From Macrostomum lignano (lineage: Eukaryota): 64,000 nt of DNA. The DNA lies in contig NIVC01002721.1 of the NCBI GenBank assembly GCA_002269645.1, positions 82,577-146,576 on the forward strand. The letters run 5' to 3'. Below are positions 11,011 to 54,254 of the stretch, in pieces (within the stretch, counting starts at the first letter, position 1; the number at the start of each line of letters is the position of its first letter). Below the pieces are notes generated by a model that did not search any database, had not been told where the DNA came from, and saw only the letters and a program-made list of their open reading frames with translations. The position numbers were made by a program, and so were the translations under genes.

Positions 11011-11336
11011 AGAGGTTTAAGTGGGTTCATAAAAATTCTTTAAAAAATCATAAAAATTCTTACAGCAAACACTTAAACAGAAGTTACAATATATGTACCT
11101 GCGCCATTTTATAAAGTGATGGCTTCCTCAGTGTCATGTAGGATTCTTCTATTCTAACTTAGTTGTCTACAAATCATTTGAATATAGACTACTAATATCA
11201 GTAGTAGATAAAGCGTCATTCCACTCTACTCTTAATTCGATTCATGAGTGTGTCTTTCTGTCTTAGTGTTTGTCTTTCCGTCTGTCTGTCTGCTGACTAC
11301 TGTACAATAAAATCAAAAAACTTTCCAGCGCACCAT

Positions 11337-13420
11337 ATGGCAGCCGCCAAGCCAAAAGTCTCCAACCCGCTGAGCCTGAGCCTGCCAGACCGGGCACTCA
11401 GCGGCATCCTGCGCTGCCTGGACCTGCGCAGCCTGGCCGCCTGTCGTCTCGTCTGCCGCGCCTGGCTGTCTCGCATCGACGCTTTTTGCAGCGGCGGCGC
11501 CTGCGTTGGTGGTGGCTTGTTGACCGCTGGTCGCGCCGTCCGTCAGCTGTGCGGCGGCGGCAGCAGTGCAAAATCGCCGACCGCCTGGCAGGCGCTGCAG
11601 CTGTCTAGACGGTGCAGCTTGGTGTGCTCCACGCTGAAAGAGACGGACGTGCAGTGCGAGGAGGAGCTGCTGCCGAGCCTGCCGGACCTGCAGCTGCTGC
11701 CCATGGTGAGTGCTCGGCGCTCGCTCACAAATCAATGCTGCAATATTGTGTGGCTATAAGAAACGAACCAGAAAATGCGCAGCTGGAAATTTAAACTACT
11801 TATAGTAGGTTTCAGTCTACCATGGGGGCCATGGATTTTATGGTGGGGGGGGGCAAAGTAAGGAATTCTACATGACTAAGTTCCTACATAATTTTGAGAA
11901 TCGGTGTTGTTAGCACTCGTTTTGGCGCCGCAGGCACTTATTTTAGCGCCACAGACATTCATTTTAGCGCCTCAGGCACTCATTTTAGCGCCGGAGACAC
12001 TGAGACACTCATTTTAGCGCCGGAGACACTGAGACACTTATTTTGGCGCCCCAAAGCAAAATTATTGATTTCCATAGCATTTAAATGTCCCTCCTATAGC
12101 TTTCACTCGGTGGGGAGTCGGGGACATGCCCCCCCTGTCCCCCCGGTGGCGACGCCCCTGCGTGAAAGTGAATGACTCTTGTACTTGAGGTCCCAAGTTC
12201 GAGCCCCTATGCTCGTCGCAAAGTTTCCTACGTAACACCGTTTGCAGTCGGACAAGGGCGGCCGCGGCCGCCTGATGCTGCGAACTCGGATGCTGGACCG
12301 TGGCCGCTGCCGCCTTATCAATCGGCTACTGAAAGTGCCCCAAATACCCGAGGATGCCGAGTGCAGCTTGAAGTTCTGCGCCACCTCCTGGATCGGTCTG
12401 GTCATCTGCCGCTTCAACGATGGCACATGCGTGGTGACGCTGCCGCTGAGGCCTGGCGACGGCGGACTGGGCGGAGACGAAGTGCTGACCCAGGCGGTGA
12501 TCAGCCCGCCTATATCCGGCATTTTCCCTGTTGTCATGGCAACGCACAAGTGCGCCAAGTGCGGCCAAGACCAGCTGCTGGTCTACAGTATGAGCTTGGC
12601 TGCGCCCCAGCTCAGCCTGTGGTCGCTGCCGCCCGCCGCCGACTCGTTCGGCAGGTCGCCGCAAGTCATCGGCAAGCCGCACAGCGTCCTGCAAAGTGGT
12701 GTCGTGGGCAGCGATGAAGAGGCCCTGCGGATGCTGCAGGTGGCGTCGCCTGTCGAGTCGGAGTTTGCCGTGTTCGCCGTGATGAACAGCAACGATGAGG
12801 ACACTCTGACCACCGTCAGCTTCGTCCGCGCCGGGTGCCGCCAGCTCAGCCTCCTCCGCAGCCGCATCAGCCTGGGCGGAGACGAGTGCGGCTTCATCAC
12901 GGACTCCAGCGACGGCGTCCTCGTCACCATGGTGATCGACGGCCTTCGCCGACGTCGTGGACAGGCTCGCTGTCAGCTGAGACTCCGAGTGACTCGTCAC
13001 GTGCTGGCCGGACCGAAGTGCACTGTGTGTCCAGAGACCTTCCTGTACAACTGCCCGATGCCGTCTGCTGAGGTGCCCGAATCCCAGCCTAAGCTAATTG
13101 GCCACGGCAGGCAGCTGCTGTGCGTGACCTTCATGGTGCCGCACTGCCTGGCTCTGTATCGGCCGAGCTGTCCGCAGCCTCCGGTCGTCATCGACCTGCC
13201 CAACGACCAGCCGTTGCACTTTCTGTGGCCGGTCGGCAACTGGCTGAACTGCGGCATCGACCCGGAGCGGCAGAGCTGCCCGCTGCTGGTGTCAGCTGGC
13301 ATGGAGCGAGATGAAGCAAACAAACAGAGCCACCTGCTGAGCTTGAGCTTCTCTAAGGATGCTCCGCAGTCAGCTGTGTGGCAGCGGACTGTGCAGTTTG
13401 GCAGCTCGGTTTCTGAGTAA
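11337..13420 (+). CDS. F-box protein with unrecognised C-terminal region, two exons (11337-11705, 12248-13420), ~513 aa
   Basis: N-terminal LPDRALSGILRCLDLRSLAACRLVCRAWLSRI fits the F-box consensus; phase-0 intron ATG|GTGAGT...TTTGCAG|TCG; open 391-codon exon 2; paralog 3 kb downstream has the same intron position. Confidence 0.8.
11821..12160. mobile_element. Probable MITE remnant in the F-box intron
   Basis: Degenerate inverted ends (CATGGGGGCC... / ...GACGCCCCTG), internal ATTTTAGCGCC repeats; absent from the paralog's shorter intron; no TSD found. Confidence 0.4.
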
Positions 13421-17129: not shown

Positions 17130-17411
17130 GGCAATAGATTATTACACCTACCCCAGTTGGACCAGATGTGCAACCGACAGCTCAGCCACAGTTATTGCGC
17201 GGCGCATCTGAAGGCTGCTTTCGGCTGTGTCAGTTCGCACACCCTCAATTACCTCAGCTAATGCCAGTACAGCTGGGTGAACTGCAGCAATGCAGAGTTA
17301 AGCAAGTGTCTTGCTTGCTCAAGGACACAAACTGTTTCAGTGGGATCGAGAATCGAACCCCCGACCTTCAAGTCGCGAGTCCGACGCTCTAAACCACTAG
17401 GCTACAATCCC
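17130..17411 (-). mobile_element. tRNA-derived SINE with V/Meta-type central domain
   Basis: Minus strand starts GGGATTG-TAGCCTAGTGG (A box)...GGTTCGATTC (B box), with an imperfect cloverleaf, then TGTGTCCTTGAGCAAG(CAAG)ACACTT, typical of V-/Meta-SINE cores, and an AT-rich tail. Confidence 0.7.
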
Positions 17412-19944: not shown

Positions 19945-20660
19945 CCGTCTGCAGATCCCCATTAACCCATCTGCAGATCCCCATCATTCCATCTGCAGAT
20001 CCCCACCATTCGATCTGCAGATCCCCACCATTCCATCTGCAGATCCCCACCAACCCATCTGCAGATCCCACAAACCCATCTGCAGATCCCCATTAACCCA
20101 TCTGCAGATCCCCACCAACCCATCTGCAGATCCCCATTAACCCATCTGCAGATCCCCATCATTCCATCTGCAGATCCCACCATTCGATCTGCAGATCCCC
20201 ACCATTCCATCTGCAGATCCCCATTAACCCATCTGCAGATCCCCACCATTCCATCTGCAGATCCCATTAACCCATCTGCAGATCCCCACCAACCCATCTG
20301 CAGATCCCTACTAACCCATCTGCAGATCCCCACCATTCCATCTGCAGATCCCCATTAACCCATCTGCAGATCCCCACCATTCCATCTGCAGATCCCCACC
20401 ATCCCATCTGCAGATCCCCACCATCCCATCTGCAGATCCCCACCATCCCATCTGCAGATCCCCACCATCCCATCTGCAGATCCCCACCATCCCATCTGCA
20501 GATCCCCACCATCACATCTGCAGATCCCCACCATCCCATCTGCAGATCCCCACCATCCCATCTGCAGATCCCCACCATCCCATCTGCAGATCCCCACCAT
20601 CCCATCTGCAGATCCCCACCATCCTATCTTCAGATCCCCACCATCCCGTCTGCAAATCCC
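19945..20660. repeat. Minisatellite, 22-bp unit GCAGATCCCCACCATCCCATCT
   Basis: About 32 tandem copies; source of the spurious (GICRWDGGDLQMGWWGSADGMV)n ORFs. Confidence 0.95.
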
Positions 20661-21147
20661 CAATTCCCCGACAAGGACAACTGAAGTTACGTTATTTAAG
20701 TTGTCCTTGTTCCCCGACCCCATCCCATTCCATTTTTTATGAAAAAACCTACATAGTGACTGAAATAGTTTATAAACGCATATACCCATGACTACTAATA
20801 TAGTTAGTGAATATGTAATTATGTAAACTAATTTATATTGTCATTAAGTTGACTTTAAAAGCATTACGATCTGATTTAGATATGATGCTCCCTCCTTTTT
20901 GACCACCTGGTAATTAAAAGCATTACTTTATTGCTTATAGTTCACATATTTAATGGGTATGCATAAATTTTGTACTTTTTCAAGCAGCAATCCAAATATT
21001 ATCATTCCTACGATAATTTCCAGAGAAAATGGCTGCTGCAGCTTCCGAATCGTGTGAAACTGAACTCCATGATCAAATTAAAAAACTGCGTAATTGGCTG
21101 CGGCAGTCAGAAGATGTTCGTGAACACCCTCCTCCGGGGCATATACA

Positions 21148-21858
21148 ATGTACCCATTTTCGGATTTGGATTGGGATATGACTTCTGTCGATTGGTTGGA
21201 AGCAATTTTGGAATTAGAAAGAGAAGGTTACTACACTTATGATTCCTACCAATGGGTTGACGTGTCAAAAATATACCACTTCAATGATAAAAACCGAAAA
21301 GTAAAACCAGATCCAGCAAGGCGAGTATGGAAGCCTGACAGTTTCCAATACTTAAAAAAGCAGGTTGATGAACAGAAAGAAATCTCGCCTGTTTTACTAT
21401 CTCCTTCTGATGAGCATCCGGGACAGTATGATCTAACTGATGGAATCCATAGGATTGCTGCCGTTCACCATCACGGATATACATCCATTTTAGCTCGGGT
21501 GACAAACATTCGATCTCCGGATAGAACAAAAATGCCACCGCTGTTGACTGACCACTATCCATTTTGGCTCAATTACTCACACGTGTGCTCAGTGGCGGGT
21601 ACGATTGGTAGTGAAATTCAGAGTTTTAATAACTCCACATTTCTAGCAAATGAAACAGAAGTAACTGTTAATGTGTGCAGTCTTTCCTGCGCTAATAAGT
21701 TTCAAATTGAGTCGGCTCAAGCTGCGGATAATTATAACTCGTGGAAAGCCAAAAACATTAAAGGCTCCTTTGAGACGTGCAAAGGGTCTACCGGTGAATT
21801 CAGCTGTGATTCTATTGAAGAAGCGGCTAAGTTTCTGGCAGGCAAAATGTGCAAATAA
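21148..21858 (+). CDS. Intronless ParB/Sulfiredoxin (ParB/Srx)-fold protein; true start possibly 21029
   Basis: ISPVLL...GQYDLTDGIHRIAAV...GYTSILARV matches the ParB N-terminal PxxV...YxxxDGxHRxxA...GxxxIxAxV pattern (GxxRxxA). An upstream ORF from ATG 21029 is one nt out of frame across a GGGG run (21136-21139). Confidence 0.7.
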   Translation: MYPFSDLDWDMTSVDWLEAILELEREGYYTYDSYQWVDVSKIYHFNDKNRKVKPDPARRVWKPDSFQYLKKQVDEQKEISPVLLSPSDEHPGQYDLTDGIHRIAAVHHHGYTSILARVTNIRSPDRTKMPPLLTDHYPFWLNYSHVCSVAGTIGSEIQSFNNSTFLANETEVTVNVCSLSCANKFQIESAQAADNYNSWKAKNIKGSFETCKGSTGEFSCDSIEEAAKFLAGKMCK

Positions 21859-22499
21859 AGTTTAACTTTAAAACTGCGTAAAAGGTTGTGTAGCAGGTGT
21901 AGCTGTGCTTAGTGTTCAATGTTCTATGTTAATGTTGTAGCAGGTATGATTTTACTTATTTGTTCTGTCTGTCTCTAAGCTATGACTCTTTCTTGGAAAA
22001 TTCCTAAGTTCACTCGATTTCTTAGAAATCTCGTGGTAGCTGTGAGTGTCTGAGCGGTAAGACACTGTCTAATTTCCTAAACTAGTTCGAAAGTATTGTA
22101 TTGTAAAGTATTGTAATACTTTATTGAAAGTATTAAAAGTAACTCTAAAATGTAGTGTTCTTCGTTTGTTAGTTATTCTTCTGGCGTCACTGAGAAGCTT
22201 CTTGATACTCGTATTGGAAGTCCATAAGGCTCTCTCATTTTAACTGTTTAACTGTATCTATACCCATGCTACGCTTTGCAAACTTTTTTACTCCTAACGT
22301 AGTAAAAGATAAAAATTAAAGCAACGATCAGCGCTTAGCTATTCACTCAGTCTAAGTATCACAATAATAACGTACATGTACGTGTGATAATTAAAGTTCA
22401 ATTGCGATTTGCAGGATGCATATTGCAATCCCCGTGCAAAATTTAAAAAAAAACTTTCGAGCAATACACTTTCAAGAAAATATCCCTACCAAAATTGCT

Positions 22500-23443
22500 A
22501 CAACAAAACAACAACAACAACAAGAAAATACAGTCACAGTTAGAGCAGGGCGCGTCAGTCGATGGCGCGCCGCAGAGCCTGGGAGCGAACAAAGTCAGCT
22601 CCGTTGGCAGTGTCGGGCGCCCCAGCGTCGCACAGCAGGCAGTCCACGTATCGACGGGTTCGGGCCTGACCCCGCCTGAACGGACCCTGCAAGGTAAGCA
22701 GCAGGACGTCCTGAACAGGTTGGGGGCAGTAGCCCTCGGCCCGGATCACGTGACCCGCCAGTTGAGGTCGCCGCCGGCGCAAAATGATGGACGGGCGCTG
22801 CAGCTTGGCCCGATCGTACAGGACCTCGATCCCGACGCTCTCGTCAGCTGGAAAGCCGCACGGAGCAGCCCTGAGTGCGCCGAGTCCAGCTGCCGCTCAA
22901 GCGTAGCCGTCAGCGTCCACGTCTCGGCGTTGTAGAGCAGGACGGTTTCGACCCCCGCCTGCCACAGCCGAGCCCTCTGGCGGTCGGGCAGCGCTTCGGA
23001 CTGGGGGACGGCTCGGATCGAACGAAAGGCCGCCCAGGCAAGTCCTCTGCGCCGCCGGAGGTCCTCTTCCACGTGGGGCACCAGACCGCCGAGGTAGGTG
23101 AACCGCTGGCAGCGTGCGAGCCTGGTCGTCTGCCCGTCTGCGCCGCGGCACGTCAGGTCCGCTGGGAATGTCGGCCGGCACAGTCAGCACCTCGGTCTTC
23201 AGCGTGTTGACGATCAGACCGACGCTCGATGCCACCTCGACCAGCCTGTCGATCTGGCGCTGGGCGCCTTCAACGGACGAGGACAGGAGGGCGAGGTCGT
23301 CGGCGTAGCCAAGCACGCTTAGGCGCTTTTCGCCGTGGCGGTGACCGATGCGTCTGCGCAGCAGGAAGCCGTCATCAGCCGAGGGGAGAGCGGTCCGAAG
23401 CACCCAGTCCAGAAGCAGCACGAAGAGGAACGGCGCTAGCGTG
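22500..23443 (-). mobile_element. 5'-truncated RTE-clade non-LTR retrotransposon fragment (RT C-terminal part, frameshifted)
   Basis: LAPFLFVLLLDWVLR...LGYADDLALL...GLIVNTLKTEVL and VETVLLYNAETWTL motifs; short (GTT)n tract at the 3' end. Confidence 0.85.
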
Positions 23444-23736
23444 TTCTGTTCTGAAATTGCTACAAAAAGGCAATTCAATATTCATATTCAACACGAAGCT
23501 TCTAAAAATTTGAGAAACAATTCGCTTGCAAGAATCGCGAGATTTTCGTGGTGTCCAATTGCAATTCTTGGTAATTGGTTGTCACAAATTATGATGAAAC
23601 CTTTTTTAAAGCTTATAAGTTATGATCATGCTTTATAATATATATTGAACTCGTTTTCATTACATTATATATTATCATTTATGGTAAATGTCAAAAAATT
23701 GCGCCAATATGTTGCATGTACACTACAATGAAGAGT

Positions 23737-24306: not shown

Positions 24307-24600
24307 ATCAAACGGCAAAGCTTTGAAGTGGCAATGGAAAACTTGCGTCTATGAAGAAAAATTCATTTTAATTTTACGCTCTAGTATAATATTATATGTA
24401 TGTGCTGATAAGTGAAGTGGTATACACTAGAGCGATGTCAAATTCAAAAATAAAATTTGTTTAAGCGATTGTCTATCTATGGCTTTTGTACATTGCATCG
24501 AATGTACTTTTCATCTATGCGTCTAAAAATAGCGAATGAACCTACCTTGACCACTAAAGTTCCACTGAAAGTCTTGTTGTAAAAAGTTATCTCGAAAAAA

Positions 24601-26539
24601 GGGGATGTCAACTCAAGCACCAGAATGGAGCCCGAAGTTTAGCTCCAGACCAAACCGACTGCAATCGATAACTTCTCGGCCCAGATGACTAGAATCGCCG
24701 AGACATCCCATCCGGGTCTCTTCCTTGGGGTCCCAGGGGATAAAGGGGATAAAATGGGGATCTCATGTCAACTTAAGGCTCTAGAATGGAGCCCAAAGCA
24801 AGGCTCTAGACCAAACCGACTGGAATCAGCAGATTAGACATTGTTATCGAGAACTCAATGGCAAAGTACAATCGGGCACATCCAGGTTTTGAATCATTGA
24901 AACAGCTGCCACCGTCATGGACAGGGCTATCGTTGTTCGAATTCCGTTAGAATTTCATGCGCTGAGTGTTCTTGTCCAACGAACTGGACGAAATTGAGCA
25001 GCTGCACTTCAACGGCGATCTGACGCGAGGGCTAACTAACTCCTCTGCTAACACAAGGGCATGGATTTCCGTCAATCCGCTGGTCCAAGGGCATGGAGAT
25101 CCAAAAAGCTGGGGGTTCCCCCGAATTCACACAGAGAATTTGACAGAGGTTTCGGTGGGTCCGTATCAACTAAATCAAGCCGATGATTACATTCAAAACA
25201 TTCGTGCCAAAAAGGTTCTCGGTAGCTATACGAAGGTGACTCCTGAAGAGACTTTCAGTCGCTCACATCCGAACATCTGAGCCACCTGAAGTGTTGGAAG
25301 TTTCGGCAAGAGTCGTCCCAGTCAGAAAACTGAAACAACCTATTCGGTCGGTGGCATCCGTCTTGGATTTTTCTAGCTGTCGTTTTCTCGCGCCATAATT
25401 CGAAATCTTACCACGTGATTCTTAGAGTGTGTGACAGCAGCGGACAATCGCTTTGGTTTTAGAGATCCAGGATTGCAACTTCCTCATGGCTACTATTCGT
25501 CTGCAAAAGCTGGAAATACGACTGCAGGCTGCGATTGTCATGTAATGGCAGTGCTCAAACTCCTGGGCTGCTACGCTTAACCACCAAGATAGCTATCGAA
25601 GGTCTGGTGCTAGCCTTCGCTTTGTTGATTCCGCTCTTCCACGCAACGCAGGCTTGTTGCCAGAATTTATACCAGAGAAAATGCTTTACCACAGCAGCGA
25701 AAGCCTACTGAGCAACAGTCTAGCAGACAGCATGAGGAGTTTCAGTCAGCCAGCAGCAGCTCACGATCCAAGCCTCAGCCTTCAAGACTCTTTGGTCTTC
25801 AAAACCATGGTCAGCAGTGCTATACGCAATTGTTGTTGCACAACTGTTTCACTGCATCAGCAGCGAAGTCCAACTCCTTCAGCCGGTCAGAGGTAGAGCC
25901 GTGAACACCGCAATGACCAACCTGATGACATCTATGGCGACTGGACCAGCAAGCGTAGATCAACTTGTCAAAGCTATCCGAAGCCGATATCCGCAGCCGT
26001 TGTCGCCAAGACAGCAACACTCCATGAACGAGGTGCTACAGTGCATTCTGTCAGAGTTGCAGCTGCAGCGTCATTGCCTAATCGAATTTACACTAACTGT
26101 ACGTGCGGTAGTTGCCTGATTAGCACGGAGGAGCTGCTCATAGGAGTTCTGGATAATTGTATCCTCAGAATCTCCTTGCAGGAGTTTTCAACCACACTGT
26201 TAACTCTATACTGTCTCTACGCTGCTTTTACGTCACCAAAGCACGTCCCATGCACCAACACCAACTATGCAGCTGATAGTGCGCTGGAAGTTCAAGTCTC
26301 TAACGGCAGAGTGACCCTGATGCAGAGTGTCCGGAGCTGAACTTCGGGCTCCATTCGAGAGCCTTAAGTTGACATGAGATCCCCATTTTATCCCCTTTAT
26401 TCCCTGGGACCCCAAGGAAGGGACCCGGATGGGACGTCTCGGCGATTCTAGTCGTCTGGGCCGACAAGTTATCGATTGCAGTCGGTTTGGTCCGGAGCTG
26501 AACTTCAGGCTCCATTCTGGTGCTTAAGTTGACATCCCA
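24601..26539. mobile_element. Defective DNA transposon with ~220-bp TIRs; transposase remnants on + strand (PHIS/ISL2EU/Spy-like assignment tentative)
   Basis: 24601-24830 is the reverse complement of 26326-26539. Internal fragments GFPRIHTENLTEVSVGPYQLNQADDYI and GYYSSAKAGNTTAGCDCHVMAVLKLLGCY resemble the C-terminal SWIM-like region of DDE_4-type transposases. Flanks are AAAAAA | TTTTT with no TSD. Confidence 0.75.
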
Positions 26540-26681
26540 TTTTTCTTGTTCTCTCTTCTTTTAAAGTCGTTTCGAAAGAAACAGAAAGCAAATATAATCA
26601 GTTTATGTTAGACTTCAACTTAGTTCGCAACACAGCTTATAAAACAAAAATTTAGAAGCAAAAAAGCAAAGTCTCGAAGGA

Positions 26682-28115
26682 CTAGGATTCCGTGTAAATG
26701 CGTAGAAGAAATTCCAATCGCTTGCCATTCAGCGGCGATTCAGTCTGTGGCACCACCGTGTAATCACCTGGCGGCAGGGACACGCGGAACACTACCGAGC
26801 GCTGGTTGTCTTCGGGGTGTTGAGCCACCTGGTACACGGGTCGCCTCAGACAGTTAGCCCCTTTATAGATGTCAACAGCTTTGACAGAGAATCGTCGCTT
26901 TTCTAGCGGAATGTTGCGCTGCCCCGGCTCTTCCAGACTGATCACAACGGTGGCAACTCCGTCCTGATTGCTTCCATCGCAAAAATTCGTCAGGAACGTG
27001 TTGTCCTCGAAGAATTCGTCAATTTTTTGACCTGGATACCACTCTCCGTAGATGTACTTGCCGTTCCACTCGGCTCCCGTCACGCCGTTGTCCAAATTTC
27101 TAGCCAAATGCAAAACTGTCAGGAACTCGAAGAACTTCATAAAGTCGGACAGCTCCATCCAGTTCTCACCGTCGTCCTGCTTCACTAATCCAGCTAGCTT
27201 CATCTGCTCGGGAGTCCACCTGGGATCATTGTCGTTCCATTTGCCGCGCCATTCAAATTCGCTTAGCGGCCCCCAGGGATTGCAAATCCGGATCAGATCC
27301 ACCAGTTTGCCATTGTGCGGGATCTGCACTGTGCCTGTGACGATGTATTCGTGACCGGACGTCAATCCAAGGCTCTCGAGGTTTTCGCCCAGAATTTCGG
27401 TGTGGGTAGCCGCACCAGCGGACAGTTTTTTTGATAGGCAATACTTAATGTTCTCCAGCACCTTTGCCCCGTCCTCCCGCTTGAATGGGATCAACTCGCA
27501 CACTCCACCGGTGAGGTCGGCCATGGCCTCCAGCTCGAGCCCGCCAATTAGAGACTCATAGCATCCGTGCAGCTTAGCTAGCGCCTTCTCCAACAGGCAG
27601 ACCCAGTACTCGCCCTCGTGCGCCGCGGCGTACACAAGCTGGCCGTCCTTGGTCGGCAGCCGATCGTCCACCATGATCTCCACTTCGCGTCCAAATGGTC
27701 GGAAGCGGAACCGGAAGGCGCCGCAGTAACCTGCACCGCTCAGTGTCTGGTCAGGAAGGATGACCTGGGACAGTAGGTCCGGTCTCTGCGTGATGGCAGC
27801 AACAGCAGCCAAGATCCAGCAGTTCTCCAGTTCGCCTTGATTTATATCAAATCGAGAGAAACCATCTTTGACGAACTCCGGGTCAGCGTCGAGTTCTTTA
27901 GGTCGCAGCCACTTGTAATTGAGCTTCTTGTGAGCATAAGTTAGAGAAGTGTCGTCGGCAGGAAATTCCGGATCTTCAAACAGCCTTTTGCTAGCTCGAA
28001 GCTCCCGGATTATCTCATTGTTCTTTTCAACGTTCAGAGTTATAAAATTAGTGGTCGACACTCGAAATTGAGAGCAGCTTGCAGTAGAAGGTCTCCAAAA
28101 CGCCTCTTGCTGCAT
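26682..28115 (-). CDS. Intronless calpain-family cysteine protease (CysPc + domain III, no penta-EF-hand), triad intact, ~477 aa
   Basis: FEDPEFP, WLRPKEL, DINQGELENCW (Cys), VDDRLP, CLLEKALAKLHGCYESL, GHEY (His), ICNPWG (Asn), WMELSDF; ends after the C2-like domain (PGDYTVVP...EFLLRIYTES). Confidence 0.9.
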   Translation of the reverse strand: MQQEAFWRPSTASCSQFRVSTTNFITLNVEKNNEIIRELRASKRLFEDPEFPADDTSLTYAHKKLNYKWLRPKELDADPEFVKDGFSRFDINQGELENCWILAAVAAITQRPDLLSQVILPDQTLSGAGYCGAFRFRFRPFGREVEIMVDDRLPTKDGQLVYAAAHEGEYWVCLLEKALAKLHGCYESLIGGLELEAMADLTGGVCELIPFKREDGAKVLENIKYCLSKKLSAGAATHTEILGENLESLGLTSGHEYIVTGTVQIPHNGKLVDLIRICNPWGPLSEFEWRGKWNDNDPRWTPEQMKLAGLVKQDDGENWMELSDFMKFFEFLTVLHLARNLDNGVTGAEWNGKYIYGEWYPGQKIDEFFEDNTFLTNFCDGSNQDGVATVVISLEEPGQRNIPLEKRRFSVKAVDIYKGANCLRRPVYQVAQHPEDNQRSVVFRVSLPPGDYTVVPQTESPLNGKRLEFLLRIYTES

Positions 28116-28729
28116 GACGTTTGCGAGCAAACTACTAATAAAATCTGTACAAAGATTAGAAAAAGAGAAGATTATCTCTATTCTCTTTTGAATCAGGGCT
28201 GGGTCTTCTTGAACCCGAGTTCCAACTTATTTGCACATTAAATGGGCAAAAAATATATTTTTCACTGGGCAACCGTATAGTCTATGGAAAAAGTCAATCA
28301 ATGCTATGCAGTAGAACACACGTCTGAACCATTTTAAAAATAGCAAAAAACACAAAATATGAACATAAAATAAACGCAGAGCAAATCAAGTTTAGATGGT
28401 GTGAATTGATCACATCCCAGATTAATGCGAGTATAGATTTATTGATATTGAAGAATACACCAGGTACAATAGTACGACCTACATTGTATAATTGGCTACA
28501 TTGTATAATTTACCAGCTACGAGTATATCTGTTACTGGATAAATTAGCTCTAATGTTAAAGGGCAACTTTATATTTTAACTTTTGCAATAACCTTTGCAA
28601 TGCACAGACTGTGGAGACTGTGACAAAAAACGCAGTTTCGAAAAACCTGCCTAACAAACGAAACCGATTTTGATTCTACGAAGTTAGATTGAACGATTTA
28701 AACAAAAGGCGTGCATATAGTCGTGTATA

Positions 28730-36564: not shown

Positions 36565-37950
36565 TCACGTGAACACTCGAAGCAAAAACTCCACCCTGTT
36601 GCCTTCAATCAGGGTCTCAATGCGAGGAATGACAACATAATCGCCAGGTCGCAGACTTGCTCTTGAAACAAATTGTCTTTCCAACTCCGTTCCCGTGAAT
36701 CGCATCAAAGGTTCGCCTTCGGGCAACTTTCCCGGATAAATTTCAATGATTTTCTTGGCGAATTCCGAGCCATCAGGGTACAGATGGCGTCGTTCGCCCT
36801 CTTCCAAACTGATAATGACGTACGCCGACCCATCCGGATTTGCTGACGCACCGGAAACGGTAAAGCTGAAGCGGTCGTCATGATAGAACTCATCCGGACC
36901 CTGGTTCATCGTCCACGCTCCGTAGACCTTCTTGCCAGTCCACTCTGACCCGGTCACGCCGCAGTCTAAATTTCTGGCCAAATGAAGAATTTGAACGGAC
37001 TCAAACATTTGCACGAAATCAGACAACTCAATTGTAGTTTCACCTTCTGTAGCATTGGCTTGCAACTGGTACCAGTCGGATGACAAGCGGGTATATTCTT
37101 GATCTAGCAAAGCTCTTCTATAATCCAAAATCTTCACAACATCGATTGAACTGCCGTCCCGTGGAACCTGAGCAGTGCCGCTAATAATATAATGGCCTCC
37201 TGGCGGCAGGTTGGGCAATTTTTTCATGCATTTTTCAGCGTCATCGCTGCTTTCATTGCGTGCACAGAACGCTTCAACGATCAGTTCCCGTTTTAAAGCT
37301 GACTGCAATATTTTCAGTAAATCGTCCACCTTGATTTCTCTTACATAGATTTCTTCGCAAACTCCACCAGTGAGTAGTGGCAATAGCTCTAACGATGCGC
37401 AAGTTGGTACATCTTCGTATGAGCCGAACAGCTTGGCAAAAGCCTTCTCGAGTAGGCACAGCCAGAACTGGCCACGGTGAGTTCCGGAAAACGCTAGTTC
37501 CCCGTTTATAGTAGGGAGCCGATCGTCAATAGTGAGCTCAAATTCTTGGCCAAATTGGCGAAAGATGAAGCGAACAGAGCCGTCATAGTTCTTGCCGTGC
37601 AGTGTCTGACCCGGTGGAATAACGCTGTGTAAGAGGTCCTGCCGATTTCCGATTTGGGCTAGACATAGTAATAAGCAATAGTTGGCACTTTGACCTCTGA
37701 CGTTCGCGTTGAATCCCGACCCGACGTTAACGTCTCCGACCTCGAACAGTAGTGCTGTGCCATTTCCGGTCATTTCGTGCGGCCTTAGCCAGACTAAAGG
37801 TTTAGAATGGTATCTTCCTGATGTCGAATGGGCCTGATGCTCATCATCCTGTCCGGCATGTACAGAACTGTAATCGGCTGGAAATTCCGGATCTTTAAGC
37901 GGCTTTTCTCCGGGTTTCAGCTTTTTAACCGCTTTGAAAAGTCTCTTCAT
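36565..37950 (-). CDS. Intronless calpain-like protein, predicted catalytically inactive (461 aa)
   Basis: Paralog of 26682-28115 (DPEFP, WLRPHE, IDDRLP, CLLEKAFAKLFGSYE, LHLARNLDCGVTG, EFLLRVFT). The triad positions read RGQSANYC, PGGHY and ILDYRR. AATAAA lies ~75 nt after the stop. Confidence 0.85.
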   Translation of the reverse strand: MKRLFKAVKKLKPGEKPLKDPEFPADYSSVHAGQDDEHQAHSTSGRYHSKPLVWLRPHEMTGNGTALLFEVGDVNVGSGFNANVRGQSANYCLLLCLAQIGNRQDLLHSVIPPGQTLHGKNYDGSVRFIFRQFGQEFELTIDDRLPTINGELAFSGTHRGQFWLCLLEKAFAKLFGSYEDVPTCASLELLPLLTGGVCEEIYVREIKVDDLLKILQSALKRELIVEAFCARNESSDDAEKCMKKLPNLPPGGHYIISGTAQVPRDGSSIDVVKILDYRRALLDQEYTRLSSDWYQLQANATEGETTIELSDFVQMFESVQILHLARNLDCGVTGSEWTGKKVYGAWTMNQGPDEFYHDDRFSFTVSGASANPDGSAYVIISLEEGERRHLYPDGSEFAKKIIEIYPGKLPEGEPLMRFTGTELERQFVSRASLRPGDYVVIPRIETLIEGNRVEFLLRVFT

Positions 37951-49329: not shown

Positions 49330-52200
49330 AGTATAGGGACGCAAAGATTATGGTAGGCGTCTTGCGCGCACGCGCTCGCAGAAGAGACGAGAAAGACAGT
49401 TTTTGACAGATTGTGGGGTCAGGCTTGTAGGTCAGACTCTAGCGTGGCGGTCAGCGTGGTGGTCCGGCCTTGGCCCCGTCGGAGACGCTCGGTTGGCTGA
49501 TGCAGCAGGGTGAGCGCCAGCGGGTTTTGCTCCCCTCTGCCATAGCTGAGGAAGCAGTGGCCGACGAGCATTAGCCGGCGCCGCTGGAGGGTGGCACTGA
49601 GCTGAGGCACGCGGGCTCTCGCCATCAGCAGGTCCGTCGGCAGCCGCTCGGGGTAATGGATGCCAAGGGCGAACCGCAGCAGCGATCGGTAGGCAGCGTC
49701 CAGGGCTCGAGACCTCGAGTCGGTCATTGGCACTGCCTCCAGTCCGTACAGGAAGATTGGCTCTACGGCAGCGCGGAACAGGCGCATCTTCAGGTCGTCG
49801 TTGGCAGCTGAGCTGAAGACCTCCCTGAGGAGATGAGCCGCACGCCAGGCCTGTGACCTCCGGTCAGCGATGATGGAGTCAGGGCTCATCACGAGGGAGC
49901 ACAGGTACCGGAAGTCTCTGCAGACTGAAATATGACTTGCCCATCTGGTAGGGTCAGGATTGGTGCTGCATCGGTGCCCACGTGCAGCACCTTCGTCTTG
50001 CGTGCGTTGATTTGGAGTCGGACTCGGGCGCTCTCCTCATAGAGTCTCGAGAGCGCTCTCTGGGCGGCAGTCGGACTGCGGCACAGCAGGGCGATGTCGT
50101 CGGCGTACGCGAGGGCGGGCAAAGGGGCAGCACCGCGGCGGGAGCTCCGGCGTGACGCCAGCAGGTAACTGTCCTCTGTGAGGCTTCGGCGCAGCACGTA
50201 GTCGACGACAAGGATGAAGAGCAGAGGGGCCAACGTGTCACCATGGAGGACTCCGGAGCTGGTGCAGAAGTCCTCAGTTGGACCATCGCTGGTTTAGACA
50301 AAGGCTTTGCTGTTGTTGTAGAGGTCCATCACTGCAGAGATAAGAGCCGGGGGGGACACGCCATAGTGCTCGAGCAGCCACGCGATCGCGCGCCGGCACA
50401 CTGAGTAAAAAGCTTTGCGGAAGTCCACAAAGACAATTGACGCAGCTCTTTGGTGAGTTTTACAGGCCTCGACGACTGCTCGAAGGGCTGCAATCTGCTC
50501 TGTTGTCGAGCGGCCGGGCCTGAAGCCACTTTGGAGGCTCAGGATCATTTGTTTGAGGCCAGACAGCAGCCGATTACGCAGTATAGCATTGAGCAGCTTA
50601 GCCAGAGTGCATTCCAGAGCAACGTCGCGTTGGTTGTCCAGACTGGTGGATGCGCCCTTCTTGGGGATGGAGACGATCTTAAAGGTGCGCCAGTTGTCAG
50701 CAGCAGTAGCATCTGGGTTGCCTCCAAGCGGACAGTGCTTGTTGAGCACAGTCGTGATGTCCTGTGTCAGCTCCGGCAGCTTGAGCACCCTGGGTGGAAT
50801 GCCATCTACTCCGGCGGCAGCGTCGGGGCGCATGGTCTTGAGCACTCGGTTCACCAAGTAGGCAGTCAGCGGGCCGGAGTTGAAAGTCGAGGGCTCAGCC
50901 GGGGTAAAGTTTTCGATCGGCAGCAAAGCAGCAGAGAGCGGTGGAGCGTTGAGCTCATTGTGGTAGTGAGTGGCCAGCAGGGCTTTGCGATTGTGTATGG
51001 ACTCAGCACCTACAGCGGCATTGGCCCTCTGCTTCCTGCCAGTCAGGCGGTTGATGGCGCGCCAGGCCGCTGTGTGCCGGCAGTTGTCTGTCGCTAGTTG
51101 AATTTCAGCAACAGCCTCCTGGACAAAGGCTTCGGTCCTCCGGGCATGCGTGTCGCGTAGTTGGGCCCGGGCTGTTTCAGCCTGCTCACTGTCTTGGCCA
51201 AAGACTGCGGTTGTTCTTTGCACGTCGCGCCTAGCGATGGAGATCTCCTCGTCGGAGTCCCAGGCGGCTTTTGGCTGGTGCGGTGTTCGTTTTGGTAGGA
51301 TCGAGGCAGCTTTCTCAACAGCTCTGGTGAAGGCGTCCGCGATTCATTCAGGGCCGGAGTAGCATTTTGCAGTTTTTCAATGAACGCACTGTGCGTGTCT
51401 GGGTTTCTCAGATCTGCTCAGAGGGGGGTGCGGTGGGCCAGCCTTGAACTTTTTCCATCGGCAGTCGATGTCGCAGGCCAGCAGAGAATGGTCGGACCTC
51501 ACGCATCTGGGGCGGATTTGACCACTTTGCGCAGTCGAGAACTGATGGCCGAAGGGCACAAAATCCAGTCCAGCCTGGTGGTCCGTCCATTTGGGCCGAA
51601 GAAGGTGGGTAGCTTGTTGTACTGCTGCCGCATGACACCATTGGCTGCAATCAGGTCTTGAGAGTGAATGAAAGTTGACAGGAAGTCCGAGTTGGTGTTG
51701 GTGGAGCCGCAGTTTTTCTTCACCAGGCGGCCATCAGGGGACAGTGGCGCGTTGAAGTCTCCAGCCACAAAAAGCAGGTCGCGACCAGGGACCGAGTCGA
51801 TGAGCATCCCAGGTGGTCATACATTGACTCAGTCTCGGTAGGGTCAGTAGCTGTGCGTGGGGCTGTGGGGGCGTAGACGCAGATTACATGAAGGCGCCTG
51901 TCCTTCTTGGCAAAAGAGGTAATGTCAAGGCGGTCGGTTGGGAAGCTGGCATTCAGAAGGGCCCTTGAGGCACTAGGTGACAGCAGAAACCCGATGCCTC
52001 CAGAGCCCTGGGCTGAGGCTGGGGCGGCTCGGAACTGCCAGCCAAGGCCTGGATCAGCGCACTCTTCGGTGCTCCTGCGGTGTTCTTGGACAGCCAGAAT
52101 GGAGATGTTCATGCTCTTTGCCAGCTTGGTTAGCTCGTGCAGTCTCCAGGGCGCAGTGAGCGTTCGTGCGTTGAAGGTAGCAAGTCTTGTGCAGTTATCA
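49330..52200 (-). mobile_element. Near full-length RTE-like LINE (APE endonuclease + RT) with frameshifts and stops
   Basis: LATFNARTL, ILAVQEHR, VICVYAPT, VAGDFNAP, TRLDWIL, SDH (APE); IVSIPKKG, QSGFRPGRSTTEQI, FVDFRKAF, LAYADDIALL (RT); LFRAAVEPIFLYG. Confidence 0.92.
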
Positions 52201-52960: not shown

Positions 52961-54254
52961 ATGTCTGTTGCGTATTCCGACATAAAACTCTATTTGCTTA
53001 GTGGCGCATACGACGTCCCTGTGTCTTTAACAACAACTAAGGAGAAGAATAATTTCAAAAGCAAGGTTCGGCAAAAGGCGCGCAACTTCAAGTACGAGGG
53101 CCAGCAGCTGTTCTATCAGCTCTCAGCTCGGGATGATAATCAGAAGAAGCGCCATCGGTCAAGGGAGCGTCGCCTGGAGGTTGAAGAACAAGAAGAACGG
53201 AGTCGATTAATTCAAGAGTATCACACCTCTGCGACTGGAGGAGCTCATCAGGGGATAAAGTCCACCCTATCGAAGCTGCAGGGACGATTTCATTGGGACG
53301 GCATGACGAAATCTGTGCAAGATTACGTTCAGAAGTGCGCCGTCTGCCAGCGCAACAACAAGAGGGCCGTGGCGAACGAACCCCAGTTGACGCCAATTTT
53401 GATTCCTTCGATGGCCGAACGAGTATTCGGTTTTGTCTGCGTTGACTACGTCAGGTTCGAGCCATCTTCGAAAGGTGATTGTTTAATCGATTAATAGCTT
53501 TTGTGGCTACGTGTATCAAATCTAAGTAGCATACTCTCATTCATTTTAATTCATTTTTATTGACAAGAGACGAACCTCTGCTTATCACCCCCAGGTTAGT
53601 AAAGTTAATATTTTTTTGCCTTCCATGCTCTCAGTAATAAGTCTTAATTCGAATAAGTTCATATTCGATATTAAAGAACTGACAATGCTCTTTCAGACCA
53701 ACGGTCAGTGCGAGCGCCTCAAACAGAGCTTAGTCGCAGCTCTGCGCAAAATGTGCGACCAGGACTCTGACTCTGCGGCATGGGATGATTATGTCGATGG
53801 CGCAGTTCTGGCGTACAACAGTCGCGTGCACTCGACAACTGGCGTCTCGCCTTACAAGGCCGTGTTCGGCAACGAACCACGACTTCCCCATGACAGCATC
53901 GGACCAGCAGACGCTGCCATGGTCGGTGACGTCACGATTCGTCATGTAGAGAGAAAGTCCGAAGCACGTGGGCGGACCATTGAGTTGATGCGTCGACGCA
54001 TCCGTCGGGCGCAGCAAGCTATGCAGCAGTACCATCAGCAGCGTCTGGCGTCTGCCAGCAGCCTCAGCTTCAAAGTCGGAGACAAGGTGCTGCTGCGGAA
54101 CTTCGACCGTGACGATCGGAAAGGCGGCAAATTGAAGACACCATGGTGCGCCAAGGTTTACACGGTCGAACGTGTCCTAAGCAACAACCTGTACCGACTC
54201 GAGGGGAGATCTACAGCGATCAATGGCCGCCACCTGAAAAAATACCACGAATAG
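52961..54254 (+). mobile_element. Intron-containing Gypsy-type integrase without gag/RT (Ginger/GIN-like transposase), internally deleted
   Basis: Met start; YL..G.Y N-terminus; HHCC finger (EYH...GAHQG...CAVCQ); VDY (first catalytic Asp); donor at 53475; remnant exon RRTSAYHPQ (53568-53594), 102-bp GT-AG intron, then TNGQCER...WDDYV...AYNSRVHSTTGVSPY...VGDKVLLR (GPY/F-like). Confidence 0.75.

What the first reader, a model, noticed from the sequence alone, without database searches (positions are those of the whole stretch)
21029..21858. ParB/Srx-fold gene in an animal genome: candidate horizontal or viral acquisition
Seen: an intronless ORF with ISPVLL...YDLTDGIHRIAA...GYTSILARV and a Cys-rich C-terminal extension, embedded among eukaryotic repeats. 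Established: GxxRxxA is the nucleotide-binding motif of ParB CTPases and related kinases/nucleases, and animal sulfiredoxin instead has FGGCHR with a catalytic Cys, which is missing here. Inference: a non-sulfiredoxin ParB-like enzyme (NTPase, nuclease or kinase) possibly taken from bacteria, phage or a large DNA virus. It sits just left of the secreted-protein/calpain island.
Basis: partly seen in the sequence, partly recalled or inferred. Interest (0 to 1): 0.72.

Follow-up and report, generated by a model that had tools for sequence, protein, structure and literature searches.

The report
Fast-evolving ParB/Srx-fold gene in a flatworm
This is a real, unannotated gene of the flatworm Macrostomum lignano. 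It encodes a nucleotide-binding protein of the ParB/sulfiredoxin fold and belongs to a tiny, unnamed animal gene family; it is not a fresh bacterial or viral import, and it is evolving unusually fast between the duplicated copies of this genome.

Summary
The quoted residues are there, in a 236-codon ORF (21148-21858, +). The finding's start at 21029 is a separate 50-codon ORF in another frame. It matches the N-terminus of the closest relative, so the gene carries one frame change.

The ParB/Srx fold is supported:
- A family profile hits the serine kinase SbnI (E 8e-7), then ParB, Noc and KorB.
- Every listed PDB match (50) of the AlphaFold model is a ParB/Srx-fold protein.
- It is neither a sulfiredoxin (no Cys in residues 1-146) nor a canonical ParB clamp (no HTH, below the TIGR00180 cut-off).

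Recent horizontal or viral acquisition is not supported. The window is Macrostomum lignano contig NIVC01001642.1. A search of 1.84 billion proteins found nine related clusters, all unnamed:
- most lie on eukaryote-type contigs or transcripts;
- at least one lies in another animal;
- one lies on a prokaryote-type contig;
- nothing was found in the phage, plasmid, viral (IMG/VR) or GTDB-genome searches run.

New here: a duplicate M. lignano contig is mostly 95-100% identical over about 20 kb, but only 72-79% identical across the 1-kb gene block. Both ORFs stay open, all four indels are in frame, dN/dS is about 3 in the C-terminal domain, and all six Cys are conserved. This points to a functional, rapidly diversifying gene.

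The parts
21029..21858 (+). The whole ParB/Srx-fold gene, given as one part. It consists of a short N-terminal piece that opens at the ATG at 21029 and a 236-codon main ORF that ends at the stop at 21856-21858. One frame change separates the two. The main ORF has no in-frame stop.
   Evidence: ORF list and three-frame translation. The N-terminal piece matches P0001 residues 3-25 and the main ORF matches P0001 residues 37-190, collinearly. The same net frame offset is seen in the duplicate contig L125.
21232..21516 (+). ParB/Srx-fold nucleotide-binding core (main-ORF residues about 29-123). It includes W61-K62-P63 and D98-G99-I100-H101-R102.
   Evidence: Pfam ParB_N residues 54-122. TIGR00180 residues 53-122. 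PDB profile hits to SbnI, ParB, Noc and KorB. AlphaFold pLDDT is about 90 over most of this span. Foldseek matches. G99, I100, H101, R102 and A105 are invariant in 10 of 10 aligned family members.
21538..21618 (+). Predicted helical linker (residues 131-157), following the conserved P130.
   Evidence: AlphaFold secondary structure H131-135 and H137-157, pLDDT 77-85 falling to about 60. The family HMM match extends to about residue 179.
21655..21855 (+). C-terminal beta-rich domain (residues about 170-236) holding five of the protein's six Cys. It is diverged from the family's C-terminal domain and evolves fast.
   Evidence: Cys positions. AlphaFold predicts strands plus a terminal helix at low confidence, pLDDT 45-60. 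dN/dS for residues 141-236 is 2.97 against the duplicate copy (Fisher p 0.007), with 6 of 6 Cys conserved. This part is not matched by the family HMM beyond position 180 of 253.
20942..21950 (.). Hyperdivergent block of about 1 kb. It covers the gene plus about 85 nt upstream and about 90 nt downstream. Identity to the duplicate contig is 72-79%, within about 20 kb that is otherwise mostly 95-100% identical. Both edges are sharp.
   Evidence: Tile-by-tile blastn against L125. Pairwise alignment and boundary views. Published subgenome divergence is 1.4-2.5% (PMC10733133).

Best explanation
This is a genuine, unannotated, single-exon gene of the flatworm Macrostomum lignano. It belongs to a very small, unnamed gene family found mainly on eukaryotic (at least partly animal) contigs.

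Domain layout:
- A ParB/Srx-fold nucleotide-binding domain.
- A helical linker.
- A small Cys-containing C-terminal domain.

Shown here:
- The fold assignment.
- The invariant Gly-x-x-Arg phosphate-binding positions (G99, R102), and a basic residue two or three positions before W61.
- No catalytic Cys, no HTH domain and no ParB C-terminal domain.
- The M. lignano lineage has cut off the ancestral first ~35 codons by one frame change. Both genomic copies nevertheless keep the main ORF open while changing about 43% of their residues.

Inferred:
- The domain binds a nucleoside triphosphate and serves as the NTP-binding module of an enzyme or switch, as it does in SbnI, SerK and sulfiredoxin. It is not a DNA-sliding CTPase clamp.
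- The C-terminal domain is the partner- or substrate-recognition part and is under diversifying selection.
- The gene was not acquired recently from bacteria or viruses. Any transfer into animals predates the split between the two family subgroups.
For: Reality and host:
- The ORF is present.
- The window is NIVC01001642.1 of GCA_002269645.1, the M. lignano Mlig_3_7 assembly. The neighbouring calpain has M. lignano paralogues as its best named hits.

Fold:
- Pfam and TIGR hits lie on the same stretch.
- The profile against PDB gives SbnI 7.8e-7, ParB 1.1e-4, then Noc and KorB.
- The AlphaFold model built with the family alignment has pLDDT 71.6, with the core about 90.
- Every listed Foldseek PDB match (50) is a ParB/Srx-fold protein. 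SbnI and SerK superpose at 1.7-2.9 A over 87-90 residues.

Family:
- Nine true clusters were found among 1.84 billion representatives.
- The contexts are eukaryotic: DENN, SMUBP-2 and a PCMT that is 8e-87 to human PCMT1; a pogo transposase; a two-piece gene in L001 and L006; a transcript-like contig with an AATAAA.
- The literature says sulfiredoxin is the usual eukaryotic representative of the fold, and that SerK, SbnI and Srx use it as an ATP-binding module (PMC12704722).

Selection:
- The duplicate contig L125 carries a 246-codon ORF that is 57% identical.
- Only 0.2% of random-substitution simulations at the observed divergence keep the ORF open, and 4 of 4 internal indels are multiples of three.
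- dN/dS is 0.94 for the N-terminal 140 residues and 2.97 for the C-terminal 96 (p 0.007). All 6 Cys are conserved.
Against: - There is no expression evidence. No gene is on record at this place in the collection's gene table for the assembly, and no identical or near-identical protein exists in the protein collections.
- The N-terminal ~35 codons, conserved in relatives, are out of frame.
- dN/dS of about 1 across the ParB/Srx part is what a pseudogene would show.
- The duplicate copy has lost 4 of 15 conserved family positions, including the W-K pair.
- The Pfam and TIGR scores are below their curated cut-offs.
- The C-terminal domain model is of low confidence.
- Nucleotide binding and any catalytic role are inferred from relatives only.
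- At the position aligned to the His-Glu pair of SbnI, the window protein has Arg. I recall that Glu as SbnI's catalytic residue from memory and could not check the paper.
- Silent-site and UTR divergence within the block (about 20-30%) far exceeds that of the flanks. Part of the divergence must therefore come from gene conversion or old alleles, not from selection on the protein alone.
Confidence: 0.6

Rival explanations
1. It is a decaying pseudogene: a relic of the family gene whose N-terminus was broken by a frame change and that is now drifting neutrally in both copies.
For: - One frame change separates the conserved N-terminal piece from the rest.
- The duplicate copy has two further frame changes inside that piece.
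- dN/dS is 0.94 over the ParB/Srx part and 1.34 overall.
- The duplicate copy lost the W-K pair and two other conserved positions.
- The place is not annotated.
- GC3 is 0.38, close to the AT-rich intergenic background and unlike the neighbouring genes at 0.50-0.80.
Against: - Both main ORFs remain open over 236 and 246 codons despite 157 substitutions. Only 0.2% of simulated neutral sequences do so.
- All four internal indels are multiples of three, whereas indels in the non-coding part of the same block are not.
- All 6 Cys are conserved against 57% overall identity.
- The C-terminal excess of replacement changes (dN/dS about 3, p 0.007) is not neutral.
- Neutral drift cannot explain divergence ten times that of the flanks.
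Confidence: 0.2
2. One reading: a recent horizontal acquisition by this animal from a bacterium, phage or large DNA virus.
For: - The gene is intronless in a genome averaging 4.9 introns per gene (PMC5730564).
- The fold is overwhelmingly prokaryotic and phage-borne (PMC12704722).
- The family is absent from all annotated proteomes in the collections.
- One relative, P0006, lies on a densely packed prokaryote-type contig beside a gene with a weak Flp-pilin Pfam hit.
- The best BFVD structural match is a giant-virus (Sylvanvirus) ParB-like protein of similar length, aligned over 233 columns.
Against: - The closest relatives (24-39% identity) are on eukaryote-type contigs and transcripts, one in an animal with a human-like PCMT and with a two-piece gene.
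- The prokaryote-type relative shares only the core of about 80-140 residues at 29-36% identity.
- No relative was confirmed in the IMG/VR scans, the phage records, the plasmid records, 71 candidate loci from GTDB genomes or 44 from metagenomes.
- The gene is embedded in duplicated flatworm sequence on two contigs, so it is not contamination.
- The Sylvanvirus match is structural only (13% identity, TM 0.39).
Confidence: 0.1
3. It is a canonical ParB-like CTP-dependent DNA clamp or partition or regulatory protein working on DNA.
For: - ParB, Noc and KorB are the top Foldseek PDB hits by E-value and appear in the profile search.
- TIGR00180 is the only NCBIfam hit.
- The Arg pair aligned to the Arg-Arg of Caulobacter ParB, and the Gly...Arg...Ala positions, are kept.
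Against: - The TIGR00180 score is 26.8 against a cut-off of 58.45.
- No HTH or other DNA-binding Pfam domain was found.
- Superpositions on ParB, Noc and KorB have rmsd 12-16 A because only the N-domain matches, whereas SbnI and SerK fit at 1.7-2.9 A.
- The predicted C-terminus is beta-rich rather than helix-turn-helix.
- The best sequence-profile relatives are the kinases.
Confidence: 0.05

Closest known systems
SbnI (Staphylococcus) and SerK (Thermococcus) free serine kinases, ParB/Srx fold (PDB 5ujd, 5uje, 6nr6, 5x0k, 5x0g)
   Same: - They are the best sequence-profile matches (E 8e-7).
- They give the tightest superposition (1.7-2.9 A over 87-90 residues at 15-22% identity).
- Overall size is similar (about 240-255 aa) with a two-domain layout and no HTH.
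- The Asp-Gly-x-His-Arg stretch is shared (alignment).
- The fold serves as an ATP/ADP-binding module (PMC12704722, PMC5120207).
   Different: - Similarity stops at about residue 122. The C-terminal domains are unrelated as far as the tools can tell.
- At the position aligned to the His-Glu pair of SbnI, the window protein has Arg. An acidic residue is present in only about half of the family.
- The hosts are animals, not bacteria or archaea.
- No serine or cysteine pathway context is present.
ParB/Noc/KorB CTPase clamps (PF02195 + HTH; TIGR00180)
   Same: - The N-terminal fold is shared.
- The Gly...Arg...Ala positions and a preceding Arg pair align with Caulobacter ParB 6t1f.
- Foldseek E is 7e-5 to 1e-3.
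   Different: - There is no HTH and no C-terminal dimerisation domain.
- The scores are below the curated cut-offs.
- No stretch after the core aligns with the part of ParB that follows its nucleotide pocket.
- No ParA-type partner was seen among the window ORFs scanned.
Sulfiredoxin (animal and plant Srx; PDB 1xw4, 3cyi, 6ky4)
   Same: - It is the only well-known animal protein with this fold.
- The structural match has TM(target) 0.5-0.67 and rmsd 4-5 A.
   Different: - Residues 1-146 have no Cys, so the Cys-dependent chemistry is impossible.
- The protein is twice as long and has an extra C-terminal domain.
- The sequence profile does not retrieve Srx at E <= 1.
Giant-virus ParB-like proteins (Sylvanvirus A0A3G5AHG1, Orpheovirus A0A2I2L3N2) in BFVD
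   Same: - They are the best viral structural matches.
- The Sylvanvirus protein is 227 aa and aligns over 233 columns (E 6.5e-7).
   Different: - Identity is 13% and TM 0.39.
- They are not retrieved by sequence in 1.84 billion proteins or in IMG/VR.
- The relationship beyond the shared fold is unproven.

Membership tests
ParB/Srx fold superfamily (Pfam PF02195 ParB_N) | Sequence match to PF02195 at the gathering score | tested here: not met
   17.3 bits against a cut-off of 26.3, E 0.0048, residues 54-122. Only 2 of 10 family members match at E <= 0.1.
ParB/Srx fold superfamily (Pfam PF02195 ParB_N) | Profile-level similarity to solved ParB/Srx-fold proteins | tested here: met
   Family profile against PDB: SbnI 7.8e-7, ParB 4umk 1.1e-4, ParB 6t1f 8.4e-4, then Noc and KorB.
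ParB/Srx fold superfamily (Pfam PF02195 ParB_N) | Predicted three-dimensional fold | tested here: met
   The AlphaFold core has pLDDT about 90. Every listed Foldseek PDB match (50) is a ParB/Srx-fold protein with probability 0.96-1.00. The named BFVD top hits are mostly ParB-like proteins.
ParB/Srx fold superfamily (Pfam PF02195 ParB_N) | Gly-x-x-Arg phosphate-binding stretch in the loop-helix after the central strand | tested here: met
   G99, H101, R102 and A105 are invariant in 10 of 10 aligned members. They align with the corresponding Gly, Arg and Ala of Caulobacter ParB and with the Asp-Gly-x-His-Arg of SbnI.
Canonical ParB CTPase DNA clamp (TIGR00180) | Score at or above the TIGR00180 cut-off | tested here: not met
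   26.8 bits against 58.45.
Canonical ParB CTPase DNA clamp (TIGR00180) | Helix-turn-helix DNA-binding domain and C-terminal dimerisation domain after the N-domain | tested here: not met
   No such Pfam domain was found in any of the 10 members. The predicted C-terminus is four strands plus one helix. Superpositions on ParB are confined to the N-domain (rmsd 12-16 A overall).
Canonical ParB CTPase DNA clamp (TIGR00180) | CTP binding and hydrolysis, with a parS-type loading site | not testable with these tools
   There are no biochemical data. No ParA-type ATPase was found among the window ORFs scanned.
Sulfiredoxin | Catalytic Cys in the nucleotide-binding loop | tested here: not met
   The loop reads D98-G99-I100-H101-R102. 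The first Cys of the protein is residue 147.
Sulfiredoxin | Single-domain protein of about 100-140 residues | tested here: not met
   236 residues in two domains. The Srx chains matched are 89-121 residues long.
Free serine kinases SerK/SbnI | Closest sequence and structure relatives over the N-domain | tested here: met
   E 7.8e-7 for profile positions 47-122. rmsd 1.7-2.9 A over 87-90 residues.
Free serine kinases SerK/SbnI | Acidic residue at the position aligned to the His-Glu pair of SbnI (I recall the Glu as catalytic; the paper could not be opened) | tested here: not met
   By the alignment, this position falls on R59 of the window protein. An acidic residue sits there in only about half of the family members. 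The importance of that Glu in SbnI is recalled from memory because the SbnI paper is not held.
Free serine kinases SerK/SbnI | Homologous C-terminal substrate-binding domain | tested here: not met
   There is no alignment beyond about residue 122 in the profile search or beyond about 90 residues in Foldseek. The C-terminal model is of low confidence, so structural similarity cannot be excluded.
Recent horizontal gene transfer into an animal | Nearest relatives belong to the donor group (bacteria, phages, large DNA viruses) | tested here: not met
   The nearest relatives are on eukaryote-type contigs. The scans of viral contigs, phage records, plasmid records, GTDB genomes and metagenomes found no member.
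Recent horizontal gene transfer into an animal | Physical linkage to host genes, which excludes contamination | tested here: met
   The gene is on the same contig as flatworm calpains, LINE fragments and a satellite, and the whole region is duplicated on a second contig.
Recent horizontal gene transfer into an animal | Absence from related animals (patchy distribution) | tested here: inconclusive
   There is no hit from NCBI or UniRef sources among 1.84 billion representatives. However, unannotated single-exon genes would be missed, and the taxa behind the Logan and ENA contigs could not be named.

The most novel reading that the evidence does not exclude
The gene is one member of a cassette-like, rapidly diversifying gene family of flatworms and some other animals. 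In this reading it works in a biological conflict (immunity against a parasite or mobile element, or a selfish toxin-antidote-type or self/non-self recognition locus). A ParB/Srx nucleotide-binding module is coupled to a Cys-scaffolded recognition domain under positive selection, and whole transcript-sized blocks are exchanged between paralogues or kept as old, hyperdivergent alleles.
Probability: 0.15. Interest if true: 0.8.

Novelty: new variant of a known kind. Interest (0 to 1): 0.55.

Why it matters
Sulfiredoxin is regarded as the usual eukaryotic representative of the ParB/Srx (ParB-CTPase) fold (PMC12704722). A recent survey of the fold used Pfam's gathering cut-off, which this family does not reach, so it would have been missed there.

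If the gene is functional, three things follow:
- Animals have a second, independent use of this nucleotide-binding module. Its closest relatives are small-molecule kinases rather than DNA clamps.
- The 1-kb block that is about ten times more diverged than the rest of two duplicated Macrostomum lignano regions is a clean natural case for studying how single genes escape the general similarity of young subgenomes. It keeps its ORF, its Cys residues are conserved, and replacement changes are in excess.
- It also illustrates how lineage-restricted single-exon genes are missed by annotation.

Tried and rejected
- The word-indexed protein search with the ORF found nothing. With the family alignment it found only two members.
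- Exact look-ups of the ORF and of the calpain ORF as listed failed.
- AlphaFold without an alignment was useless (pLDDT 39.5).
- P0008-P0010 from the exhaustive search are long repetitive proteins with inflated scores and are not relatives.
- The PADLOC defence models gave no hit for any member.
- PHROGs gave only weak ParB-like hits.
- A degenerate DNA pattern spanning the W-K-P and D-G-I-H-R codons found 71 GTDB loci and 44 metagenome loci. None encodes a family member by HMM.
- The IMG/VR scans with the alignment and with P0006 confirmed no relative.
- tblastn of the window protein against phage and plasmid records, and of P0006 against phage records, found no match.
- No terminal inverted or direct repeats bound the gene, and there is no second copy within the window. 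A transposable-element reading was therefore dropped.
- The pogo transposase next to one relative is not repeated at the other loci.
- A compositional island was considered. The ORF's GC (0.41) equals the local intergenic background, so this is uninformative.
- Attempts to name the taxa behind the Logan, ENA and JGI samples failed.
- The relative in the other animal (L001 against L006) shows no hyperdivergence between its two contigs, so that feature is specific to M. lignano.
- The SbnI paper could not be opened.
Full report
**1. The observation**

The short ORF is nevertheless part of the gene:
- Its residues 14-35 match residues 3-25 of the closest relative, P0001 (pairwise E 0.002).
- The main ORF matches P0001 residues 37-190 (E 2e-31).
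- In P0001's own 1,075-nt contig the two parts are one frame.

The window gene therefore carries one frame change between an N-terminal piece of about 35 codons and the main ORF. The main ORF has no in-frame stop.

The gene lies between a 22-nt satellite (19948-20662, 32.6 copies) and LINE reverse-transcriptase fragments. No repeats bound it, and there is no second copy in the window.

**2. The host**

- The window encodes two uninterrupted classical-type calpains, an F-box protein, LINE fragments and a Ty3/gypsy-type integrase fragment.
- The calpain's best named relatives are Macrostomum lignano proteins (365 and 356 bits, against 267 for the next group).
- An exact look-up places the window on NIVC01001642.1 (71,213 bp) of GCA_002269645.1.
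- That accession is the Mlig_3_7 assembly of M. lignano (PMC5730564).

No gene is on record at the ParB-like ORF in that collection's gene table. The protein is absent from the protein collections.

**3. The fold**

Single-sequence hits are weak, but all fall on residues 53-122:
- Pfam ParB_N: E 0.0048, below the gathering score.
- TIGR00180: E 3.8e-6, below its cut-off.
- PHROG ParB-like families.
- Caulobacter ParB 6t1f: E 0.0095.

An exhaustive HMMER scan of 1.84 billion cluster representatives gave 12 hits. Nine are true relatives (P0001-P0007, P0011, P0012). Three are repetitive proteins unrelated to the query.

A profile of the ten sequences hits SbnI at 7.8e-7, then ParB (1.1e-4, 8.4e-4), Noc and KorB.

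AlphaFold with that alignment gives pLDDT 71.6. The core is at about 90 and the C-terminal third at 45-60.

Foldseek against PDB lists only ParB/Srx-fold proteins among its 50 matches: ParB, pNOB8 ParB, Noc, KorB, PadC, sulfiredoxin, SbnI, SerK and the Pyrococcus homologue. The tightest fits are SbnI and SerK, at 1.7-2.9 A over 87-90 residues. The fold assignment is therefore sound.

Conservation and family exclusions:
- G99, I100, H101, R102, A105, L84 and A116 are invariant in 10 of 10 sequences.
- W61, K62, D98, Y94, L115 and P130 are kept in at least 9 of 10.
- Residues 1-146 contain no Cys, which excludes sulfiredoxin chemistry.
- There is no HTH or other DNA-binding domain, which excludes a canonical ParB clamp.
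- Likeness to SbnI and SerK ends at about residue 122. At the position aligned to the His-Glu pair of SbnI, the window protein has Arg. I do not file it as a serine kinase.

**4. The family and its distribution**

All nine clusters come from Logan, ENA or JGI assemblies. None comes from NCBI or UniRef, and none has a name. They fall into three groups:
- One subgroup of seven clusters at 33-60% identity to each other.
- The window protein with P0001, at 36% identity.
- The outlier P0006, which shares only the core.

Genomic contexts:
- P0012 and P0020 lie on contigs of 212 and 454 kb. Their neighbours are DENN and SMUBP-2 fragments and a PCMT that matches human PCMT1 at 8e-87 over its full length. 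This host is an animal. There the gene is in two pieces about 640 nt apart.
- P0016 lies on a 78-kb contig next to a pogo-type transposase and a PHD-finger protein with a weak YopJ-type acetyltransferase hit.
- P0001 lies on a transcript-like AT-rich contig that has an AATAAA near its end.
- P0006 lies on a 4.2-kb contig with tightly packed, partly overlapping ORFs and a neighbouring gene with a weak Flp-pilin Pfam hit. This is a prokaryote-type layout.

No relative was found in any of these searches:
- IMG/VR
- phage records
- plasmid records
- PADLOC
- 71 GTDB-genome loci and 44 metagenome loci picked by a two-motif DNA pattern

The best viral structural match is a 227-aa Sylvanvirus ParB-like protein, aligned over 233 columns. 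It has only 13% identity and TM 0.39.

Conclusion: this is a sparse, old family that is mostly eukaryotic and at least partly animal. A recent import into this flatworm is not supported. An ancient transfer from prokaryotes remains possible.

**5. The duplicate copy**

A second contig of the same assembly (NIVC01004424.1, locus L125) carries the same region. Over about 20 kb, most 250-nt tiles are 95-100% identical, and the calpain is 98-100% identical. The four tiles covering 20951-21950 are only 72-79% identical.

The edges are sharp, at about 20942 and about 21950. The block is thus the coding sequence plus about 85 nt upstream and about 90 nt downstream. Published divergence among the three M. 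lignano subgenomes is 1.4-2.5%, with about 98% identity at the sub-kilobase scale (PMC10733133). The block is therefore at least ten times more diverged than the norm.

The L125 copy:
- Its main ORF has 246 codons and is 57% identical in protein.
- Its N-terminal piece has the same net frame offset, plus two further frame changes that compensate each other.
- All four internal indels of the main ORF are multiples of three.
- It has lost 4 of 15 conserved family positions, including the W-K pair. The window copy keeps 14 of 15.

Evidence on selection between the two copies:
- With 157 substitutions, only 0.2% of random simulations keep the frame open.
- Nei-Gojobori dN/dS is 1.34 overall.
- For residues 1-140 it is 0.94 (dS 0.31).
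- For residues 141-236 it is 2.97 (dS 0.095, dN 0.283; Fisher p 0.007).
- All six Cys of the window protein are conserved.

The relative in the other animal shows no such divergence between its two contigs.

Reading: the frame has been kept open by selection, and the C-terminal domain shows an excess of replacement changes. Silent and untranslated sites of the block are also far more diverged than the flanks. Exchange with another paralogue, or long-kept divergent alleles, must therefore contribute. Which of the two applies cannot be told from 64 kb.

**6. The likely mechanism**

Shown:
- A ParB/Srx nucleotide-binding core with its phosphate-binding Gly and Arg positions intact, preceded by basic residues that align with the Arg pair of ParB.
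- A helical linker and a small C-terminal domain.

Inferred, by analogy with SbnI, SerK and sulfiredoxin, where the fold is an ATP/ADP-binding module of an enzyme (PMC12704722, PMC5120207):
- The protein binds a nucleoside triphosphate.
- It acts on a substrate or partner held by the fast-evolving C-terminal domain.

Its substrate, its nucleotide preference and whether it is expressed are all unknown. The pseudogene reading keeps about 0.2 probability because dN/dS is about 1 over the core, the N-terminus is cut off, and there are no expression data.

**7. Verdict**

- The fold call is right.
- The 'not sulfiredoxin' call is right.
- The 'horizontal or viral acquisition' reading is not supported as a recent event.

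What is new is an unannotated animal family of the ParB/Srx fold, and a striking gene-sized hyperdivergent block between duplicated flatworm regions. I rate it a new variant of a known kind, of moderate interest.

Noticed in passing
window 24596-26544: An element of about 1.95 kb bounded by 216-nt inverted repeats (92% complementary). It is absent from the duplicate contig L125, whose coordinates run on without a gap. It is probably a non-autonomous TIR transposon inserted in one of the duplicated regions only.
   Followed up: partly
window 19948-20662: A tandem array of a 22-nt unit (32.6 copies, 90% matches) directly upstream of the gene. It is also present, with a different length, in the duplicate contig.
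   Followed up: partly
window 26682-28130 (-) and 36565-37950 (-): Two uninterrupted calpain ORFs (Peptidase_C2 plus Calpain_III, with no EF-hand domain found in the ORF), in a genome that averages about 5 introns per gene. The first is 98-100% identical in DNA on the duplicate contig. The nearest named relatives are M. lignano paralogues at 40-51% identity.
   Followed up: partly
window 22897-23478 (-), 50294-51223 (-), 52961-53494 (+): Retroelement debris: two reverse-transcriptase fragments (RVT_1) and a Ty3/gypsy-type integrase zinc-binding domain. The GC-rich patch (0.68) at 22700-23300 overlaps the first fragment.
   Followed up: no
window 17341-17411 (-): A borderline Rfam tRNA match (30.8 bits, gathering score 29) that ARAGORN does not call. 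It is possibly a tRNA-derived repeat.
   Followed up: no
L001 8986-9240 and 9878-10570; L006 8979-9233 and 9812-10570: In the relative from another animal, the family gene is split into two pieces about 640 nt apart. The last residues of the first piece are repeated at the start of the second. This is either an intron or an insertion, and it was not resolved.
   Followed up: partly
L007 1-4244: The only prokaryote-type relative (P0006) sits among small, same-strand, partly overlapping ORFs with no Pfam hit and essentially no PHROG hit, beside a gene with a weak Flp-pilin Pfam hit. Whether this contig is a bacterium, a plasmid or a virus is unknown.
   Followed up: partly
window 11244-11759 (+): An ORF with an F-box domain, GC3 0.70, in a GC-rich stretch.
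   Followed up: no
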